Assembly: GCF_006345805.1 (NCBI RefSeq)
Contig: NC_043006.1
Coordinates: forward strand, 101,246,001-101,310,000
Reading direction: 5' to 3'
Source: Octopus sinensis
Lineage: Eukaryota
Length of the DNA: 64,000 nt
Shown: piece after piece, positions 27,896-64,000 of the stretch
How the letters are laid out: each line of letters begins with the position of its first letter
Numbering within the stretch: the stretch's first letter is position 1
The notes under the pieces: generated by a model
The model's database searches: none
What the model was told of the DNA's origin: nothing
What the model saw: the letters and a program-made list of their open reading frames with translations, nothing else
Position numbers and translations under genes: made by a program

Positions 27896-28220
27896 ATCAT
27901 CATCATCATCATCGTTTAGCATCCGCTTTCCATGCTAGCATGGGTTAGACGGTTCAACTGGGGTCTGGGAAGCCAGAAGGCTGCACCAGGCCCAGTCTGA
28001 TCTGGCAAAGTTTCTACGGCTGGATGCCCTTCCTAACGCCAACCACTCCACGAGTGTAGTGGGTGCTTTTTACGTGCCACCAGCACAGGTACCAGATGAA
28101 GCTGGCAACGGCCACGATCGAATGGTGCTTTTTATGTGCCACCTGCACGGGGGCCAGGCGAAGCTGGCAACGGCCACGATCGGATGGTGCTTTTTATGTG
28201 CCACTGGCACGAGGCCAGTC
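27896..28220 (-). mobile_element. RTE 3'-UTR fragment with three 62-bp internal repeat units
   Basis: GGTGCTTTTTA(C/T)GTGCCAC units start at 28062, 28124 and 28186. Confidence 0.8.
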
Positions 28221-31769: not shown

Positions 31770-31876
31770 AAAAATATGGAACGCTTCACGAATTTGCATG
31801 CCATCCTTGCGCAGGGGCCATGCTAATCTTCTCTGTATCATTCCAATTTTAGAATATGTACCACCGTAGCTAGTAC
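31770..31876 (-). pseudogene. U6: Full-length U6 snRNA retrocopy
   Basis: Minus strand GTACTAGCTACGGTGGTACATATTCTAAAATTGGAATGATACAGAGAAGATTAGCATGGCCCCTGCGCAAGGATGGCATGCAAATTCGTGAAGCGTTCCATATTTTT (107 nt). ACAGAGA box and ISL intact, two CpG-type transitions, no recognisable upstream TATA/PSE. Confidence 0.93.
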
Positions 31877-32177: not shown

Positions 32178-32259
<82 letters not shown>

Positions 32260-32835
32260 GGTGGTGGTGGTGGTGGTGGTGGTGGTGGTGGTGGTGATGG
32301 TGGTGGTGGTGGTGGTGGTGTGGTGGTGGTGGTGGTGGTGGTGGTGGTGGTGATTGGTGGTAGTGGTTGTGGTGGTGGTGGTGGTGGTGTGATGGTGGTG
32401 GTGGTTGGTGGTGGTGGTGTGGGTGGGTTGATGGTGGTGGTGATGGTGTGGTGGTGGTGGTGGTGGTGGTGGTGGTGGTGGTGGTGGTGATGGTGCTAGT
32501 GGTGGTGGTGGTGGTGGTGGTGGTGGTGATGGTGTGTGGTGGTGATGGTGCTAGTGGTGGTGGTGGAGGTGGTGGTGGGGTGATGGTGGTGGTGGTGGTG
32601 GTGGTGGTGGTGGTGATGGTGCTGTGGTGGTGGTGGTGGTGTTGGTGGTGATGGTGGTGGTTGTGATGGTGGTGGTGGTGGTGTGGTGTGGTGGTGGTGG
32701 TGTGGTGGTAGTGGGTGGTGGTGGTGGTGGTGGTGGTGGTGATGGTGGTGGTGGTGTGGGGGTGGTGGTGGTGGTTGATGGTGGTGGTGGTGGTGATGGT
32801 GATGGTGGTGGTGGTGATGGTGGTGGTGGTGGTGT
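32178..32835. repeat. (GAT)n to (GGT)n trinucleotide array running into the assembly gap
   Basis: Direct reading. Confidence 0.95.
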
Positions 32836-32935
32836 NNNNNNNNNNNNNNNNNNNNNNNNNNNNNNNNNNNNNNNNNNNNNNNNNNNNNNNNNNNNNNNNN
32901 NNNNNNNNNNNNNNNNNNNNNNNNNNNNNNNNNNN
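32836..32935. other. Assembly gap (100 N)
   Basis: Run of n. Confidence 1.
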
Positions 32936-36491: not shown

Positions 36492-39052
36492 CCGTCCTGC
36501 GGTATTCTACCCACAAATGCTCAACCTACAACCAAATTCGATGCCGTCTATTGCAAGCTGAGCCTATCTGAGTTTTGCCTGCCCGTGTTGGCTGTCTACA
36601 GGCCGCCTCTAGCCGACCCCCAGGACGATGCTCATCTACTCGAAGCGATAAGATTTGTTTCAGCTTCGCATGACTGCTTGGTACTAGGTGACTTCAACGC
36701 TCCCACGATCGATTGGCCCGCATCAATTTGTACAACATCTTCCCGGTTCGGCCAGGCCCTTCTTGACGTGGCTGAAGATTGTTTTCTATCGCAACATGTT
36801 GAATATCCGACAAGGCATCGGTCTGGGCAGCAGCCATCTATGCTAGATCTGGTATTCTCCCGCTATCCAAGATCAGTGTCAGACGTATCTGTGTGCGCCC
36901 CTCTTGCCAAGAGTGATCATGCGGTCCTGAAGTTCGTCATGCACACAACTTTTTCCACGCCCACGATTACTTCGCTGCCACGTAGAGTCTTCTCTGCAAT
37001 TAATCTTGAAATTCTAACCGAGGCTTCCGCGCTTCTGGACTGGCGTTCCCTGATGACGTTGTCCTCAGTTGACGAACTATGGTCATCCCTCAAAGCATAT
37101 GTAATCTGTTTGACTGACCAGGCAGTTCCCGTTGGACTTCCCAAGAGGAAGAAACACAAGCCCTGGGTGACGAAGAAGGTTAAACGAGAACGTCGACTCA
37201 GAGATATTGCTTGGGCTGAATTCAAAAATCTGGATTCGACTGCAGCTTTTGAGGTGTACAAAACTCAACGAGACCGAGCCGTGAAAATTGAAAAGAAAGA
37301 ACGCTTCAGTTATGAATACAAAATCGCGGCAAATGCCAGTAGCAATCCAAAAACCTTCTTTGCCCATGTCCAGCGGAATTCCCGCTTGAACAACCAGATT
37401 GCAACGTTGGTAGACTCAACAGGCGTATCGATTGAGGACCCTTATCAACAGAGTCAATTATTTGCCGAGGCTTTTTCAACTATTTTCAAACAAGATGATG
37501 GTCGTGAACCCCCTCCATTTGATAGATCGGTACCTCCAATGCTTCGATTGATCATCACGCGGGACCAAGTCAAACGTGTTATTCAAGGCCTCGATGTCAA
37601 CAAGGGTCACGGCCCTGACGGCATACACCCACGGGTTATCAAAGCGTTGGCTCCGGTCATCTGCGAGCCCTTAACACGACTATTCAATATGTCATTGGCG
37701 ATGGGTGTTATACCTGCAGACTGGAGAACAGCGATAATCTGCCCAATTTTCAAGAAAGGGAGCCGCGAAGACCCGCTTAACTACCGACCGGTTTCCCTTA
37801 CATCAATAATCAGCAAGATGTTCGAAACCATCCTTAAGAAAAGTATGATGCTCTACCTCCTAAACACAGCCTCGATCACTGATTCCCAACACGGCTTCGT
37901 GCCGAAGAGATCATGCTTGACCAACTTACTAGTAATGGAAGAATTGGTGACGTGCATCCTCGATGATAGTGATGCTGTTGACATCGTTTTATTGGACTTT
38001 GCCAAAGCTTTTGACTCGGTAAACCACCGCCTACTACTTGTCAAGCTTCAAGCATATAGTTTCCATCCGGATATTGTATGATGGGTTGGTGCCTTCCTCT
38101 CAGATCGCTCCTTCCAAGTTCAAGTTAATGGTTCGCGGTCCGACGTCTCCAGTGCGAGCAGTGGCGTACCTCAAGGTTCAGTGCTTGGGCCCTTGTTGTT
38201 CTTAGTCTTCATAAATGACTTGCCCGACGACCTCACGCAACACACCCTTCTATTTGCCGACGATATCAAACTGGTCGCTCCTCGCGGTAGTATAGAGGAT
38301 CTTTGTCGATGCCTCCACCAAATTTGGAAGTGGTCTAATGATTGGGACCTGTGTCTGAACGTGTCAAAGTGCTGTCATCTGCCTGTCAGCTCTACTCCTG
38401 CAACTCAACATGATTTCGAGCCGGGTCGTCTGCTGCTGGAGAGGACCGATCAGGTAAAGGACCTGGGTATCTTGGTGGATTCCTCCTTTTCGCCTTCGGC
38501 CCAGTGCGTCCATGCTGCCAACAAAGCGCGCGGAATTCTGTTTTTGATTCAACGGTCATTCGGAATGCTCACAGCAGCCATATCCCTGCCACTCTATGTC
38601 ATGCTGGTGAGACCCATATTGGAGTATGGGATTCAAGCCTCTTCTCCTTATCTCCTCAAAGACATACAGCACCTCGAAAGAGTCCAGAGGCTGGCTACCC
38701 GCATGGTTCATGGTCTCAAAAATTTGTCCTACGAAGAAAGGCTGAGGACGCTCGACATTTATTCTCTTGAAAAACGCCGCCGCCGTGGTGATCTCATTCT
38801 TGCCCACAACATCATAAGCGGGAAGTGTAACCTCTCGAAAGAGCTGTTCTTCACTCCTGCTCCGGAGCGTCAGCTGCGGGGTCATTCCGAAAAGCTCTAC
38901 CTGCGATGATTTCATCTCAATCGAAGGAGAGGAGCTTTCTCCGTCCGGTTGCGGATCCGTGGAACAAGCTGCCAGACGAGATGGTGAAGATGCCGACGAC
39001 CGCTTTGTTCAAAGCCTCCCTGGACCTCAAGTGGCCTGAACTCTTTACATGA
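36492..39052 (+). pseudogene. LINE ORF2 with two in-frame TGA stops (38079, 38907) and one late frameshift
   Basis: ORFs 36585-38081 and 38181-38909 are in the same frame. Reading through gives IV*WVGAFLSDRSFQV and LR*FHLNRRRGAFSVR, then a shift to VADPWNKLP. Confidence 0.88.
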
Positions 39053-39149: not shown

Positions 39150-39608
39150 TTAGATATCAGAAAGCAGAACCAAAATCGAAGTCGATCAACATCAATGGAA
39201 ATTGCAGCTGTGATACCAGTGCCGGTGACAAGTAAGCGAACCATCCGATCGTGGCCGTTGCCAGCACCGCCCCAACTGGCCTCCGTACCGGTGGCACGTA
39301 AAAAGCACCATCCGTTCGTGGCCATTGCCAGCCTCGCCTGGCCCCCGTGCCGGTGGCACATAAAAATCGCCATCCATCCATGGCCGTTTGCCAGCTCTGC
39401 CTAGCACCTGTGCAGGTGGCATGTAAAAAGCACCCACCACACTCACGGAGTGGTTGGCATTAGGAAGGGCATCCAGCCGTAGAAACACTGCCAGATCAGA
39501 CTGGGCCTGATGCAGCCTTCTGGCTTCACAGACCCCAGTTGAACAATCCAACCCATGCTAGCATGGAAAGCGGACGCTAAACGATGATGATGATGATGAT
39601 GATGATAT
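39150..39608 (+). mobile_element. RTE 3'-UTR fragment (host site of the CR1 insertion)
   Basis: Family homology, about four internal units, (ATG)n tail. Confidence 0.8.
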
Positions 39609-41767: not shown

Positions 41768-43061
41768 AATACTAATAACAATAATAATACTAATAACAAT
41801 AATAATAATAATAATAATAATAATGATAAAAATACTTTCTTGAAATAAAAATAAAAATATAAAAAATATAGGAATGAACAAATAATGCCAAAATAAAACA
41901 AAAATGAAAAATACAAAACAGAAACAAAAAAAAAACAAATGATAAGATGGTTAGAAGAAATATTTCATAAGAAACGTTGTAATGATACTCTGTGAATAAG
42001 CTGAGAAATCATAGCATCTTTGCTGTTATGTTTATGACGAACCAATTGTTGAATACTTTCACAATTAACTGCCTCTAGCTATTCATTGACAACATTTTAT
42101 GAAAAGTCAGTTTCGAAAAAGCATTCAAAAGGGTTCCAATATCTAATTTCTTTAAACTGTAAATCTGTTATAAAAGTTTGTGTGAATAGTAGTTATATTT
42201 CACTACTCCTTCTTCTCCTTTTTCTTCTACTTCTTCTTCTTCTTCTTCATTATTATTATTATTATTATTATTAGTCGTTGTTGTTGTTGTTGTTGTTGTT
42301 GTTATGGTATTTTCTTTTTAATGAGATTATGGTTCAATAAAAAAAAAATTTTGTTCTTGTTCTTGTTCATGTTTTCTATTTTTCTTAATATTTACTTGAA
42401 AGCTAACGAAATTTCAAGATAATATTTGTGAATACTATTAGATGTGGTACAAGTATTCTAGTAATAATATAAAACTGAATATAAAATAAGCTTCATTTTT
42501 TTTTTTACTTTTTTTTTTTTTTTGATAATTCGCAGAACAGTAAATTGGTAGAAATTCCAATACTGAACTCAGAAAAAAAAATGTAACTAAATAAATGAAT
42601 AAATGAAATAAGAAAAAGAAAGTGATTTGCATATTTTTCTGTCTTTCAATGATGGAGTGAATTTGTAAAATTCTTTGGAAACATTCAAGTTTTCAAAGAT
42701 ATTCATTTTAGCATCAGTATTAATGTATCCTGTAATAGAGAAACAAATCTCTTACTCTAATATTATTATATTATAGAATTTCCCCTTGTACCAAAGATAT
42801 TACTGAGAATTCTACATGTCAGAATTCTTTTCCTTGGTGTTTAAATATGGATGTATTCTAATTTAAGAGAAGGTCTATTAAATGTAATCAATGAATAGTT
42901 TTAGAGATTTAGATAGTCTTCATAACACTAATCATCCAGCTGCTTACAGTGTAAATGATATTGTAGGAGTATGTGACACTGGCACTTGTTGGGTGCGTCA
43001 CATCTCGTTACATAGTTGTAGAAAGGAAAAATAGCAGGAACACGAATCTCCGAACAAATCA

Positions 43062-43550
43062 TCATCATCGTTTAACAACCGTTTTCCATGCTAGCACGAG
43101 TTGGACGGTTCGACCGGGGCCTGGGAAGCCAGGAGGCTGCACCAGGCTCCAGTCTGATCTGACAGTGTTTCTACAGCTTGATGCCCTTCTTAATGCCAAC
43201 CACTCTGTGAGTGTAGTGGGTGCTTTTTATGTGCCACCGGCACAGGTGCCAGGGGTGGCTGGCAGCAGCCATGATCAGTTGGTGCTTTTTACGTGCCACT
43301 GGCACAGAAGCCATTCAAGTCAGCGCTGGCATCAACCACGTTCGGATGGTGCTTTTTACGTGCCACAGGCACAAGTATCACAACTACAATTTCCATTTGA
43401 TATTTATTTTGATGTTGATGTACTTGACTCAATAGGTCTCCCCAAGCACAGCAGGTCACCCTACGATCCAAGGTAAGCACAGCAGGTCGTTCTGCAATCC
43501 AAGGTACTTTGGATGGGCTGGGGCTATGTGAAACTGGTGTAGGAAGCAGC
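43062..43550 (-). mobile_element. RTE 3'-UTR fragment with a small tandem duplication near 43445-43510
   Basis: Closely matches 8561-9030. Confidence 0.82.
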
Positions 43551-44872: not shown

Positions 44873-45341
44873 GCACCATCGCAGCTGCTGCCCCTGCTGC
44901 AAATACTTATTCTCTTATTTTTTCTCTCTCTCTCTTTGTCACTTTGTCTCTCAAACTTCTCCCCTATCAATCTCTTCTCTATATTTAAAGCTGTAGAGCA
45001 CTGGGCTCTGCCAAGTTATAAAAAATGCCTCAGACTTGCTGCATTTCACAAAAGCACTTCTACAAATCTATCTGGATTTGAGGGTCCAAGGAAGAAGGTG
45101 TGTGTGTGTGTGTGTGTGTGTGTATTCATGCATGCATGTATACATAAATGTATGTATGTATATATGTACCTATGTATGCATGTATGTTAATAGGTAGCCA
45201 AGCACACAGATAGACAGAGAGAAACAGAGATAGAGATAGATGTACATACATACAGACAGTCCAATAAACAGATAGACAGATAGATATTTAATTTATTTTT
45301 AAGATCTGTTCAAAGGAGAAAGTGCTGAAGTCTGAAAGGTC

Positions 45342-45579
45342 TGATCCATGCCATTCAGATCACCATAGACTGACAGATATTGAACCAAAATTGATTTCAT
45401 CAGTCTATGGTGATCTGAAAGGCATGTATCATGCCTTGAGGAATTCTAACCTTCCACACACAAAAATGTACATATTTTCCTGATAGACATTGACAGATAT
45501 TGAACCAAAATTGATTTCATCAATGTCTATCAGGAAAATATGTACATTTTTGTGTGTGGAAGGTTAGAATTCTTCAAGG
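45342..45579. repeat. Twin long inverted repeats with identical 26-nt loops
   Basis: Arms 45342-45373/45400-45431 (30 of 32 paired) and 45434-45493/45520-45579 (59 of 60). Loop CAGATATTGAACCAAAATTGATTTCA occurs twice. Confidence 0.95.
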
Positions 45580-62927: not shown

Positions 62928-63098
62928 TAAAGCTTTTAAGCTAGTATATTGCTTTTAAGCTACTGACTCCTAATGGGAAGATCTACAAACAGGTCTCTGA
63001 CTTGTTTGGGAGAATTTGTTGCAATTGCTTCCTCCAGAGTTGTAGGTAACGCTATTTGAAGTAGGTTCACAAGCACGCAAAATATTCGTTGAGAGTAT

Positions 63099-64000
63099 CT
63101 GCCTTATCCAATACTGGGTGCGGATTTTCTACACCATTGTTCATTATGGGTTGATGTGAGGAGGCAGCAGCTCTTCGACGATACCACCTTCTTATCAACT
63201 CCTATGAAGAATTCTACTGTCGCTCCTGTAAGTCCCTCTTTCTTCGTTGCCACATCAGGAGACCCGTATCATGCATTGCTTGCTTCTTTTCCGGATCTTA
63301 CTGACTTGTCGTTTAAACCGACCGAGCCTGTTCATTCAACAAGAAATTTCATCTCCACGAAGGGACCTCTTGTTTTCCCCGTGGCACTAGACAAGCTTAA
63401 GGCACCTTGAGCTGAATTTGAACATATGCTCCAGCTTGGTCTTATTCAACCATCCACGAGCCCATAGGCATCACCTTTAAACATGGAAAAGAAAAAAAGA
63501 TTCCGCAGATTTCCGAGCAGCTGGGGATTTCAGACACCTCAATGCCATCACTATCCCTGACAGTTATCTCTTACCATATCTTCAGGATTTTTCATCTGCT
63601 TTAGATGGATGTACCGTTTTCTCCAAGATTGACCTGGTACGTGCATAGCACCAAATACCAGTGAACCCGGCAGACATCCCGAAAACAACCGTGACCACTC
63701 CATTTGGCTCGTTCGAGTTCTTATCCATGCCATTTGGACTGCGCAAACCCGCCAGCACTTTCCAGCGGTTCATTGATGAAGTCGTTCATAGGATGGATTT
63801 CGTTTTTGCTCGCATAGATGACCTCTTCATAGCCAGGGACACGGCGGAACATCATCATCAACACCTATCTCAGTTTTTCCAGCGTCTCCGGTTGTACAAT
63901 GTCAAGGTCAACCCTGCAAAGTGTGTGTTTGGTACAACTTCGTTGGAGTTCCTGGGGCATCTTATAGACTCTGAAGGTATTCGGATCCTGCCGGCGAAGG
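63099..64000 (+). pseudogene. Ty3/Gypsy LTR retrotransposon pol fragment (protease end + RT), inactivated, runs off window
   Basis: PILGADFLHH..VD, AEFEHMLQLGLIQPSTSP*ASPL, GDFRHLNAITIPD, VFSKIDLVRA*HQIPV, TTPFGSFEFLSMPFGL, RIDD (from YxDD), KCVFG..LEFLGH. Stops and a frameshift. Confidence 0.92.

What the first reader, a model, noticed from the sequence alone, without database searches (positions are those of the whole stretch)
45342..45579. Twin long hairpins with different stems but the same 26-nt loop
Seen: layout A-L-A'-B'-L-B, with 32-bp and 60-bp arms (3 mismatches in total) and loop L identical and in the same orientation. Both stems close with ATAGAC(AT)TGA/TCA(AT)GTCTAT, and the A'/B' junction is itself a mini-hairpin GGCATG-TAT-CATGCC. 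Simple inverted triplication would invert L, so this needs several template switches at a short ancestral IR (inference). Alternatively it is a hairpin-RNA pair (Dicer/ADAR substrate) or a fold-back element with a fixed recognition loop. No feature here explains it.
Basis: partly seen in the sequence, partly recalled or inferred. Interest (0 to 1): 0.8.

Follow-up and report, generated by a model that had tools for sequence, protein, structure and literature searches.

The report
Twin hairpin scar of templated repair
Two adjacent, almost perfect DNA hairpins in an octopus genome share one 26-base loop, and because every one of the 120 extra bases can be copied from its neighbours, this is most likely the scar of a single copying accident during DNA repair or replication, not a gene or a mobile element.

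Summary
The layout is A 45342-45373, L 45374-45399, A' 45400-45431, TG, B' 45434-45493, L 45494-45519, B 45520-45579. The arms are 32 bp and 60 bp with 3 mismatches in total, and the two loops are identical and in the same orientation. It is far beyond chance.

The window is octopus DNA: a non-coding stretch full of SINEs and microsatellites. The 120 bp at 45400-45519 are tiled completely by four local templates with only 3 mismatches. The AT indel in the closing stems is compensated inside each hairpin. The A'/B' joint is itself an 8+3+8 palindrome ending in a CCTT/AAGG microhomology.

This fits a one-off templated insertion at a short imperfect inverted repeat (ancestor A-L-B). Fold-back synthesis ran on both sides and the ends were joined by microhomology. 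A chain of replication template switches would give the same product.

I found no other copy of the loop or arms in the window, in 143 kb of Octopus vulgaris, or in three public collections. There is no target-site duplication and no Rfam family match, and molluscs reportedly lack an endo-siRNA pathway.

The orthologous locus and the whole genome could not be reached, so the ancestor is inferred. A loop-sharing family is not excluded. Interest is moderate to low.

The parts
45331..45339 (+). Left-flank 9-mer TCTGAAAGG. It is an exact direct repeat of 45414-45422 in A' and an 8/9 inverted repeat with A 45351-45359.
   Evidence: only exact direct 9-mer besides the loop; sequence. It implies that the A/A' mismatch 45353/45420 is a later change in A (inference).
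45342..45373 (+). Arm A, the outer (left) arm of hairpin 1. It ends in ATAGACTGA and is inferred to be ancestral sequence.
45374..45399 (+). Loop L, copy 1 (CAGATATTGAACCAAAATTGATTTCA).
   Evidence: 2 exact matches, both on the + strand, 0 expected.
45400..45431 (+). Arm A', the reverse complement of A (30/32). Inferred to be newly synthesised by fold-back copying of A.
45419..45437 (+). Junction palindrome AAGGCATG-TAT-CATGCCTT spanning the A'/B' joint. Positions 45430-45437 are the exact reverse complement of 45419-45426. Its last 4 nt, CCTT, are also the start of B' and pair with AAGG at 45576-45579.
   Evidence: DNA fold -7.4 kcal/mol, z -4.7; 7 such hairpins in 64 kb.
45434..45493 (+). 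Arm B', the reverse complement of B (59/60). It ends in ATAGACATTGA and is inferred to be newly synthesised.
45494..45519 (+). Loop L, copy 2. It is identical to copy 1 and in the same orientation.
45520..45579 (+). Arm B, the outer (right) arm of hairpin 2. It starts with TCAATGTCTAT and is inferred to be ancestral. Its last 13 nt, GAATTCTTCAAGG, resemble the left flank GAAGTCTGAAAGG (45327-45339) at 10/13.
   Evidence: P about 2e-4 for one pre-set comparison; found post hoc.
45400..45519 (+). Putative 120-bp templated insertion (A' + TG + B' + L). It could equally be drawn as 45374-45493. Four local templates cover 120 of 120 bases with 3 mismatches.
45365..45408 (+). Core 1: ATAGACTGA-L-TCAGTCTAT (no AT in either arm).
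45483..45530 (+). Core 2: ATAGACATTGA-L-TCAATGTCTAT (AT in both arms). The left arm of core 1 plus the right arm of core 2 reconstitute an imperfect 9/11 inverted repeat.

Best explanation
This is a mutational scar, not a device. It is a single 120-bp insertion made entirely of copies of its immediate surroundings, created at a short imperfect inverted repeat.

Inferred ancestor: flank-A-L-B-flank (45342-45399 joined to 45520-45579). A ends in ATAGAC--TGA and B starts with TCA-AT-GTCTAT, 26 nt apart.

Inferred event:
1. The DNA broke, or was nicked on both strands around this quasi-palindrome, so that both 3' single-stranded tails carried it.
2. Each tail folded back on itself at TGA/TCA and was extended on its own strand. 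The left tail copied 32 nt of A, giving A'. The right tail copied 60 nt of B, which appears as B' on the + strand.
3. The tip of A' folded once more (CA on TG, loop TAT) and copied 6 further bases, completing CATGCCTT. This created a CCTT end.
4. That end paired with AAGG at the tip of the other extension. Fill-in and ligation then sealed the break.

Because each tail keeps its own copy of L, both loops end up in the same orientation.

[quoted passage not shown] A chain of three replication template switches (leading strand to lagging template and back) gives the identical product and cannot be told apart from sequence alone.

Shown: the anatomy, the complete tiling, the compensated indel and the templated joint. 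Inferred: the ancestor, the order of steps and the enzymes.

As it stands, the locus can form a twin cruciform in DNA. If transcribed, it would give a 32-bp and a 60-bp double-stranded RNA. No function is indicated.
For: 1. All 120 extra bases are explained by four local templates with 3 mismatches: rc of A, rc of 45419-45426, rc of B, and a direct copy of TGA-L-TCA.
2. The 2-bp AT difference between the two closing stems is compensated within each hairpin. The outer arms (A without AT, B with AT) form the imperfect repeat and each inner arm is a perfect copy of its own partner. This is what fold-back copying predicts. It parallels yeast fold-back priming, where imperfect repeats (11 bp with a 6-bp spacer; 5 bp with a 35-bp spacer) were corrected to perfect palindromes (PMC10622511).
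3. The A'/B' joint is an exact 8+3+8 palindrome ending in a 4-nt CCTT/AAGG microhomology. Only 7 such mini-hairpins occur in 64 kb. Iterated cis snap-back followed by annealing in trans is the published behaviour of SD-MMEJ and Pol theta (PMC5728401; PMC4912351).
4. Template switching is documented to create perfect hairpin stems of 28 to 83 nt in one step (PMC10710096).
5. The loop and arms are unique: none elsewhere in the window, in 143 kb of Octopus vulgaris, or in the metagenome, bacterial-genome and viral collections.
6. There is no target-site duplication at the outer borders.
7. The site is non-coding DNA among SINEs and microsatellites, and no gene model matched any ORF in 42.4-49 kb.
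8. The A' base at 45420 agrees with the flank 9-mer 45331-45339 rather than with present-day A. This suggests an ordinary substitution in A after the event, so the structure is a real, slightly aged allele.
Against: - No outgroup or second allele was available, so the A-L-B ancestor is a reconstruction.
- A two-sided snap-back needs both 3' tails to contain the 44-48-nt repeat unit. That requires a staggered break (for example nicks at the base of an extruded cruciform) or two chromatids.
- The reconstructed ancestor folds only weakly as DNA (-9.7 kcal/mol, z 0.3; the core alone -3.4).
- Tracts of 32 and 60 nt are much longer than the median 7-bp Pol theta insertions reported in vitro.
- An identical 32-nt core in two hairpins with different stems is also what a loop-specific element or a hairpin cap ligated to both ends of a break would produce.
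- Several of the finer arguments (the 9-mer, the 10/13 flank similarity) were found post hoc.
Confidence: 0.5

Rival explanations
1. Same class of event, but replicative. One or two short template-switch mutations occurred at a fork. The nascent strand copies A-L, switches at the short repeat to the opposite or nascent strand and copies A backwards. It then jumps to the far end of B and copies it backwards, and returns at the repeat to copy L-B. Alternatively there were two successive events: A-L-B to A-L-A'-L-B, then insertion of B'.
For: The product is identical, so all the anatomical evidence fits equally well. Template-switch mutations are a documented, relatively frequent source of perfect hairpins of this size in primates and mice (PMC10710096; PMC5453318). 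No staggered break is needed.
Against: It needs three switches in one event, or two independent events that both end exactly at the L boundary. The nested mini-palindrome plus the 4-nt microhomology at the joint looks more like iterative end-joining synthesis. Sequence alone cannot decide.
Confidence: 0.3
2. L with its closing stem is a foreign or mobile unit. This could be a small hairpin element or hairpin cap joined to both ends of a break between A and B, or a fold-back element family recognised through a fixed loop whose stems are built from flanking DNA at each site.
For: Identical caps ligated to both ends of a break would also give A-L-A'-B'-L-B with L in one orientation (reasoning from the anatomy). 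The 32-nt core is 100% identical while the stems differ. Long, near-perfect, single-copy palindromes are frequent in octopus DNA, and active TIR transposons are reported in O. vulgaris (PMC13282606).
Against: There is no other copy of L or the core in 207 kb of octopus sequence or in any collection scanned. There is no target-site duplication. The AT difference between the two cores would require two cap variants, whereas the A-L-B model predicts it. The start of L is a diverged tandem repeat of the adjacent stem end (ATAGACATTG / ACAGATATTG) and resembles the GATA/GACA microsatellite 80 bp upstream, so L looks like local sequence.
Confidence: 0.07
3. The hairpins are, or have become, RNA genes: a young miRNA-like hairpin (32-bp stem, 26-nt loop) next to a long hairpin RNA, or an ADAR-edited double-stranded RNA, maintained by selection.
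For: Hairpin 1 has the proportions of a pri-miRNA, with a stem of about 35 bp and a loop of 10 nt or more (PMC10710096). Template switching is a known route to new miRNAs (same paper). Both hairpins fold extremely stably as RNA.
Against: No Rfam family reaches its gathering score. The below-threshold hits are generic long-hairpin miRNA models, for example 66.9 bits against a cut-off of 245. A 60-bp perfect stem is not a canonical Drosha substrate. Molluscs, including Octopus bimaculoides, are reported to lack siRNA-type Dicer/Ago and endo-siRNAs (PMC12479628). Near-perfect arms are explained by recent copying and need no selection. There is no evidence of transcription.
Confidence: 0.05
4. Assembly or library artefact: a chimeric fold-back read or mis-joined palindrome.
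For: The window comes from a scaffolded assembly with a 100-N gap at 32836-32935. Polymerases used in library preparation can make snap-back chimeras (general knowledge).
Against: The structure is 12 kb from the gap and embedded in continuous unique sequence. The arms carry 3 mismatches, one of which fits a later substitution in A. L matches no sequencing adapter that I can recall (from memory, not tested). Read artefacts are usually kilobase-scale palindromes at contig ends.
Confidence: 0.05

Closest known systems
Snap-back SD-MMEJ / polymerase theta templated insertions (PMC5728401, PMC4912351)
   Same: Inverted 'primer repeats' near a break prime synthesis in cis. The nascent end can fold again, then anneals in trans at a short microhomology. 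The insert becomes part of a longer inverted repeat. All of these footprints are present here.
   Different: Both ends snapped back at the same repeat unit, so the spacer was duplicated. The tracts are 32 and 60 nt rather than a few nucleotides. It is a germline allele in an octopus, and the enzyme is unknown.
Template-switch mutations that create hairpins de novo (Loytynoja and Goldman 2017, PMC5453318; Monttinen et al. 2023, PMC10710096)
   Same: Reverse-complement copies of adjacent sequence of 28-83 nt appear in one step, giving perfect stems around a pre-existing loop.
   Different: The published model has one excursion (two switches) and yields one hairpin, or inverts the loop. Here two hairpins are formed back to back, with the loop duplicated and not inverted.
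Fold-back priming / fold-back inversions and ODIRA at short inverted repeats (PMC10622511, PMC10766183)
   Same: It starts at a short imperfect repeat with a spacer, the spacer is retained as a non-palindromic centre, and the imperfect repeat is corrected to a perfect one.
   Different: Those events copy kilobases up to whole chromosome arms and produce dicentrics or inverted triplications. Here synthesis stopped after 32 and 60 nt and the two ends were rejoined, so the net change is +120 bp.
Fold-back transposons / MITEs
   Same: Long terminal inverted repeats and the ability to form hairpins. Other palindromes in this genome look like such elements (window 5968-6199; L006 11007-11175, whose arm recurs in L001).
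   Different: In those families the arms are the conserved part and the loop varies, and there is a target-site duplication and many copies. Here the loop is shared, the arms differ, no duplication exists and no other copy was found.
Drosophila-type hairpin RNA (hpRNA) loci and young miRNA clusters
   Same: Adjacent long inverted repeats that would fold into double-stranded RNA.
   Different: There is no family match, no expression evidence, and the host clade reportedly lacks the endo-siRNA pathway.

Membership tests
Templated insertion by snap-back synthesis (SD-MMEJ / TMEJ) | The inserted sequence is a copy (reverse complement or direct) of sequence within a few tens of bases of the joint. 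| tested here: met
   120 of 120 bases are tiled by four local templates with 3 mismatches.
Templated insertion by snap-back synthesis (SD-MMEJ / TMEJ) | Inverted primer repeats lie where synthesis starts. | tested here: met
   ATAGAC(AT)TGA / TCA(AT)GTCTAT flank L, and both copied arms start exactly at TGA/TCA.
Templated insertion by snap-back synthesis (SD-MMEJ / TMEJ) | Microhomology at the final joint. | tested here: met
   CCTT (45434-45437) is shared by the mini-palindrome and B', and is complementary to AAGG at 45576-45579 and 45419-45422.
Templated insertion by snap-back synthesis (SD-MMEJ / TMEJ) | A pre-event allele without the insert exists, and the event depends on Pol theta. | not testable with these tools
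   No orthologous locus or second allele was reachable. Enzyme dependence needs genetics.
Replication template-switch mutation (four-point model) | A single excursion to the complementary or nascent strand and back explains the whole change. | tested here: not met
   A'+B' is not the reverse complement of any contiguous ancestral stretch, so at least three switches or two events are required (reasoning).
MITE / fold-back transposon | Multiple dispersed copies. | tested here: inconclusive
   There are 0 further copies in the 64-kb window and in 143 kb of O. vulgaris. This excludes only very high copy numbers, roughly above 40,000 per 2.8 Gb. The whole genome could not be searched.
MITE / fold-back transposon | Target-site duplication flanking the element. 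| tested here: not met
   The flanks ...AAAGGTC | TAGCAGT... share no adjacent direct repeat.
MITE / fold-back transposon | Conserved terminal inverted repeats shared between copies. | tested here: not met
   The two hairpins share only the loop and 9-11 bp of closing stem. The outer arms are unrelated.
miRNA precursor family | Match to a curated family model at its gathering score. | tested here: not met
   There is no hit at gathering threshold. The best sub-threshold hit is 66.9 bits against 245.
miRNA precursor family | Small-RNA reads with Drosha/Dicer ends, and conservation. | not testable with these tools
   No expression data or orthologues are available.
hpRNA / endo-siRNA locus | The host has a dedicated siRNA Dicer/Ago pathway. 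| not tested
   From the literature only: a survey of 32 molluscs, including O. bimaculoides, reported no such pathway (PMC12479628).

The most novel reading that the evidence does not exclude
TGA-L-TCA with its ATAGAC closing stem is a unit that is added to DNA ends. It would be a hairpin cap or small hairpin element that seals both sides of a chromosomal break and is later unfolded, or the fixed loop of a family of hairpins whose stems are built from whatever flanks each insertion. The many single-copy, near-perfect palindromes seen in octopus DNA would then be products of one hairpin-making system.
Probability: 0.06. Interest if true: 0.8.

Novelty: new variant of a known kind. Interest (0 to 1): 0.35.

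Why it matters
If the reading is right, this is a clean natural example of a two-sided fold-back repair or template-switch event. It duplicated a spacer and produced two ready-made hairpins, of miRNA-like and long double-stranded RNA proportions, in one step. That bears on how new structured RNAs and fragile palindromes arise.

The host is also an animal whose genome appears rich in long perfect palindromes and whose transcripts are heavily edited by ADAR. The locus itself shows no sign of function, so its value is as a mutational signature. It also points to a census of such structures in cephalopod genomes.

Tried and rejected
**Searches for related sequence**
- Exact scans for the loop, for part of B and for A in the metagenome, bacterial/archaeal genome and viral collections gave 0 hits each.
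- Exact look-up of two window ORFs, to find the same locus in other assemblies, returned nothing on record.
- A homology search with the nearby LINE reverse transcriptase gave a best hit of only 49% identity, so it offered no route to the host genome.
- A SINE-derived ORF identified the host as Octopus. It gave seven O. vulgaris loci totalling 143 kb. None is orthologous and none contains the loop, core or arms.
- A composite query of all ORF segments from 42.4 to 49 kb was used to catch any annotated gene model near the hairpins. It matched only a SINE fragment inside an O. bimaculoides VWFD protein. The orthologous locus therefore could not be fetched.

**Readings considered and set aside**
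- Rfam at permissive thresholds gave only generic hairpin hits.
- Cruciform resolution into fully hairpin-capped ends would copy whole chromosome arms, so it does not fit.
- hAT-type hairpin opening (P nucleotides) gives A-A'-B'-B with no loop, so it does not fit.
- A simple or ODIRA-type inverted triplication has junction loops that come from two different repeats, so it does not fit.
- Rolling once around a 92-bp dumbbell with two identical loops is formally a circular permutation of the structure. It needs B and A to be contiguous and two cap variants.
- Two independent MITE insertions would not share an identical 32-nt core.

Full report
**Observation.** The sequence at 45342-45579 is exactly as described. 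A (45342-45373) pairs with A' (45400-45431) at 30 of 32 positions. B' (45434-45493) pairs with B (45520-45579) at 59 of 60. Two bases, TG, lie between A' and B'. The 26-nt loop occurs twice, both times on the + strand and identical, and nowhere else in the window even with three mismatches allowed; no shuffle produced a match. The identical direct repeat actually spans 32 nt, TGA-L-TCA. Both stems close with ATAGAC(AT)TGA / TCA(AT)GTCTAT. As RNA the region folds at -160 kcal/mol, z = -20. As DNA the two hairpins give z = -9 and -20. My own scan of the whole window for non-low-complexity hairpins with loops up to 120 nt returned only these two and one head-to-head SINE pair.

**Context.** The window is animal DNA: 38% G+C, dozens of microsatellite arrays, a U6 snRNA gene, a LINE with endonuclease and reverse-transcriptase domains, and many copies of a SINE. 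A SINE-derived ORF matched only hypothetical proteins of Octopus vulgaris. SINE copies in the window are 90-97% identical to copies in O. vulgaris assembly GCA_951406725.2. The host is therefore an Octopus, either O. vulgaris or a close relative. The hairpins lie in non-coding DNA between SINE copies, about 50-150 bp downstream of a run of TG, TATG and GATA/GACA microsatellites (roughly 45100-45290). No ORF in the neighbourhood looks coding. A composite search of all ORF segments from 42.4 to 49 kb hit only a SINE fragment. No larger repeat, TIR pair or element encloses the hairpins, and the region matches nothing else in the window.

- If 45400-45519 (A' + TG + B' + L) is treated as added sequence, all 120 bases are covered by four local templates with three mismatches in total. 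The templates are the reverse complement of A, the reverse complement of 45419-45426, the reverse complement of B, and a direct copy of TGA-L-TCA.
- The only difference between the two closing stems is a 2-bp AT, and it is compensated inside each hairpin. The outer arms (A without AT, B with AT) together form an imperfect 9/11 inverted repeat, and each inner arm is a perfect copy of its own partner. This is what is expected if the inner arms were synthesised on the outer arms.
- The joint is an exact 8+3+8 palindrome, AAGGCATG-TAT-CATGCCTT (45419-45437). It explains the otherwise untemplated TG. Its last four bases, CCTT, are also the first four of B' and pair with AAGG at the far end of B. 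Only seven mini-hairpins of this quality exist in 64 kb, so one sitting exactly on the joint is unlikely by chance, on the order of 0.003.
- The 9-mer TCTGAAAGG occurs in the left flank (45331-45339) and in A' (45414-45422). Present-day A differs from the complement of both at 45353. A single later substitution in A explains the A/A' mismatch at 45353/45420. This suggests a genuine allele of some age rather than a read artefact. The argument is post hoc and modest.
- Two further similarities were also found post hoc. The left flank GAAGTCTGAAAGG resembles the end of B, GAATTCTTCAAGG, at 10/13. The first ten bases of L are a diverged tandem repeat of the adjacent stem end and resemble the microsatellite 80 bp upstream, which suggests that L is local sequence.

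**Mechanism.** The simplest history starts from flank-A-L-B-flank, with a short quasi-palindrome around L.

If both 3' single-stranded tails of a break carry that unit, each tail can fold back at TGA/TCA and be extended on itself. This could follow nicks on opposite strands at the base of an extruded cruciform, or breaks in two chromatids. The left tail gives A-L-A'. The right tail, read on the + strand, gives B'-L-B. Each tail keeps its own L, so both loops have the same orientation.

A second tiny fold-back at the tip of A' makes CATGCCTT. Its CCTT pairs with AAGG on the other extension, and fill-in closes the break.

[quoted passage not shown] It also matches fold-back priming at short imperfect repeats with spacers up to 35 bp, in which the imperfect repeat is corrected to a perfect one (PMC10622511).

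A purely replicative route gives the same product through three template switches or two successive template-switch mutations. Such mutations are documented to create perfect stems of 28-83 nt (PMC10710096; PMC5453318). A single four-point template switch cannot do it, because A'+B' is not the reverse complement of any contiguous ancestral stretch.

I put about 0.8 on the class 'one-off local templated rearrangement'. Of that, about 0.5 goes to the two-sided snap-back version and about 0.3 to the replicative version.

Weak points:
- The ancestor is reconstructed, not observed.
- The reconstructed repeat folds weakly as DNA.
- The copied tracts are long for Pol theta.
- The staggered break is an assumption.

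**Rivals.**

- *Mobile or foreign loop unit.* Identical hairpin caps on both ends of a break would give the same layout, and the core is 100% identical. However, no other copy exists in 207 kb of octopus DNA or in the three collections scanned. There is no target-site duplication. The compensated AT would need two cap variants, and L looks like local microsatellite-derived sequence. The sampling excludes only copy numbers above roughly 40,000 per genome, so this rival stays open at a low level.
- *RNA gene.* Hairpin 1 has pri-miRNA proportions. But no Rfam family reaches threshold, and the 60-bp perfect stem is not a canonical substrate. A survey of molluscs including an octopus found no dedicated siRNA pathway (PMC12479628). 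The perfection of the stems is explained by recent copying. Transcription and editing could not be tested.
- *Assembly artefact.* This is unlikely given the unique flanking sequence, the distance from the only gap (32836-32935) and the aged mismatch. It can only be settled with reads.

**What could not be done.** The DNA collections hold no cephalopod sequence matching the queries. Exact protein look-ups of local ORFs failed. The protein database contains no close relative of the local LINE and no gene model near the site.

**Side result.** The seven O. vulgaris loci contain several long, nearly perfect, short-loop palindromes. Examples are 109-bp arms with one mismatch and a 9-nt loop at L004 6952-7178, and 76-bp arms at L005 5917-6081. 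Most are single-copy in the sample. Together with the window this is about one per 25-30 kb. A recent O. vulgaris repeat annotation lists 65 'MITE' families with 65 insertions among its recently active elements (2% or less divergence), that is, singletons (PMC13282606). Hairpin-shaped DNA is thus common in this genome. What is unusual here is the pairing of two hairpins around one loop.

**Verdict.** This is a real and striking structure. It is best read as the scar of a two-sided fold-back or template-switch event at a short quasi-palindrome. That makes it a new architectural variant of a known mutational process, with no evidence of function or mobility. Interest is 0.35. The most novel reading not excluded is a loop-specific hairpin-capping or hairpin-element system, with a probability of about 0.06.

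Noticed in passing
L004 6952-7178; L005 5917-6081; L001 16777-16849; L006 9020-9145 and 11007-11175 (Octopus vulgaris GCA_951406725.2): 143 kb of O. vulgaris DNA holds several long, nearly perfect palindromes with short loops. Examples are 109-bp arms with 1 mismatch and a 9-nt loop, and 76-bp arms with 2 mismatches. Most are single-copy in the sample. Together with the window this is roughly one per 25-30 kb. Their origin (singleton MITEs or fold-back repair products) is unresolved.
   Followed up: partly
window 5968-6199: A perfect 54-bp inverted repeat with a 124-nt spacer. Each arm begins with a (TA)n run. It looks MITE-like. Only the (TA)n part recurs elsewhere.
   Followed up: partly
window 31770-31876 (-): A full-length U6 spliceosomal snRNA gene (Rfam RF00026, 108 bits, E 3e-27).
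   Followed up: no
window 36585-38909 (+): A LINE copy with endonuclease and reverse-transcriptase domains. It is split into two ORFs (36585-38081 and 38181-38909), so it is probably broken. The closest protein in the database is only 49% identical.
   Followed up: partly
window 63093-64000 (+): An ORF with a reverse-transcriptase domain (RVT_1, E 2e-15) runs off the window end. The upstream ORF looks protease-like by eye. It is probably an LTR retrotransposon.
   Followed up: partly
window 32836-32935: A 100-N assembly gap sits inside a long (TGG)n array (32223-32834).
   Followed up: no
window 13365-15234: A very long (AAT)n array of about 634 units. It drops local G+C to 14%.
   Followed up: no
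window 170-402: Two SINE fragments lie head to head and form a 69-bp imperfect hairpin (7 mismatches, 95-nt spacer). It is the only other non-simple hairpin in the window.
   Followed up: no
window 42973-43476 and the other SINE copies; proteins P0121-P0128: ORFs read from this octopus SINE are annotated as 'hypothetical predicted protein' in O. vulgaris. A fragment sits inside an O. bimaculoides VWFD-domain protein entry (A0A0L8G0B6). This is likely SINE-derived mis-annotation or exonisation.
   Followed up: partly
window 28062-28218 and 39276-39434: 62-nt tandem repeats of 2.5 units lie in opposite orientation at two sites. They appear to be an internal repeat of the SINE family.
   Followed up: no
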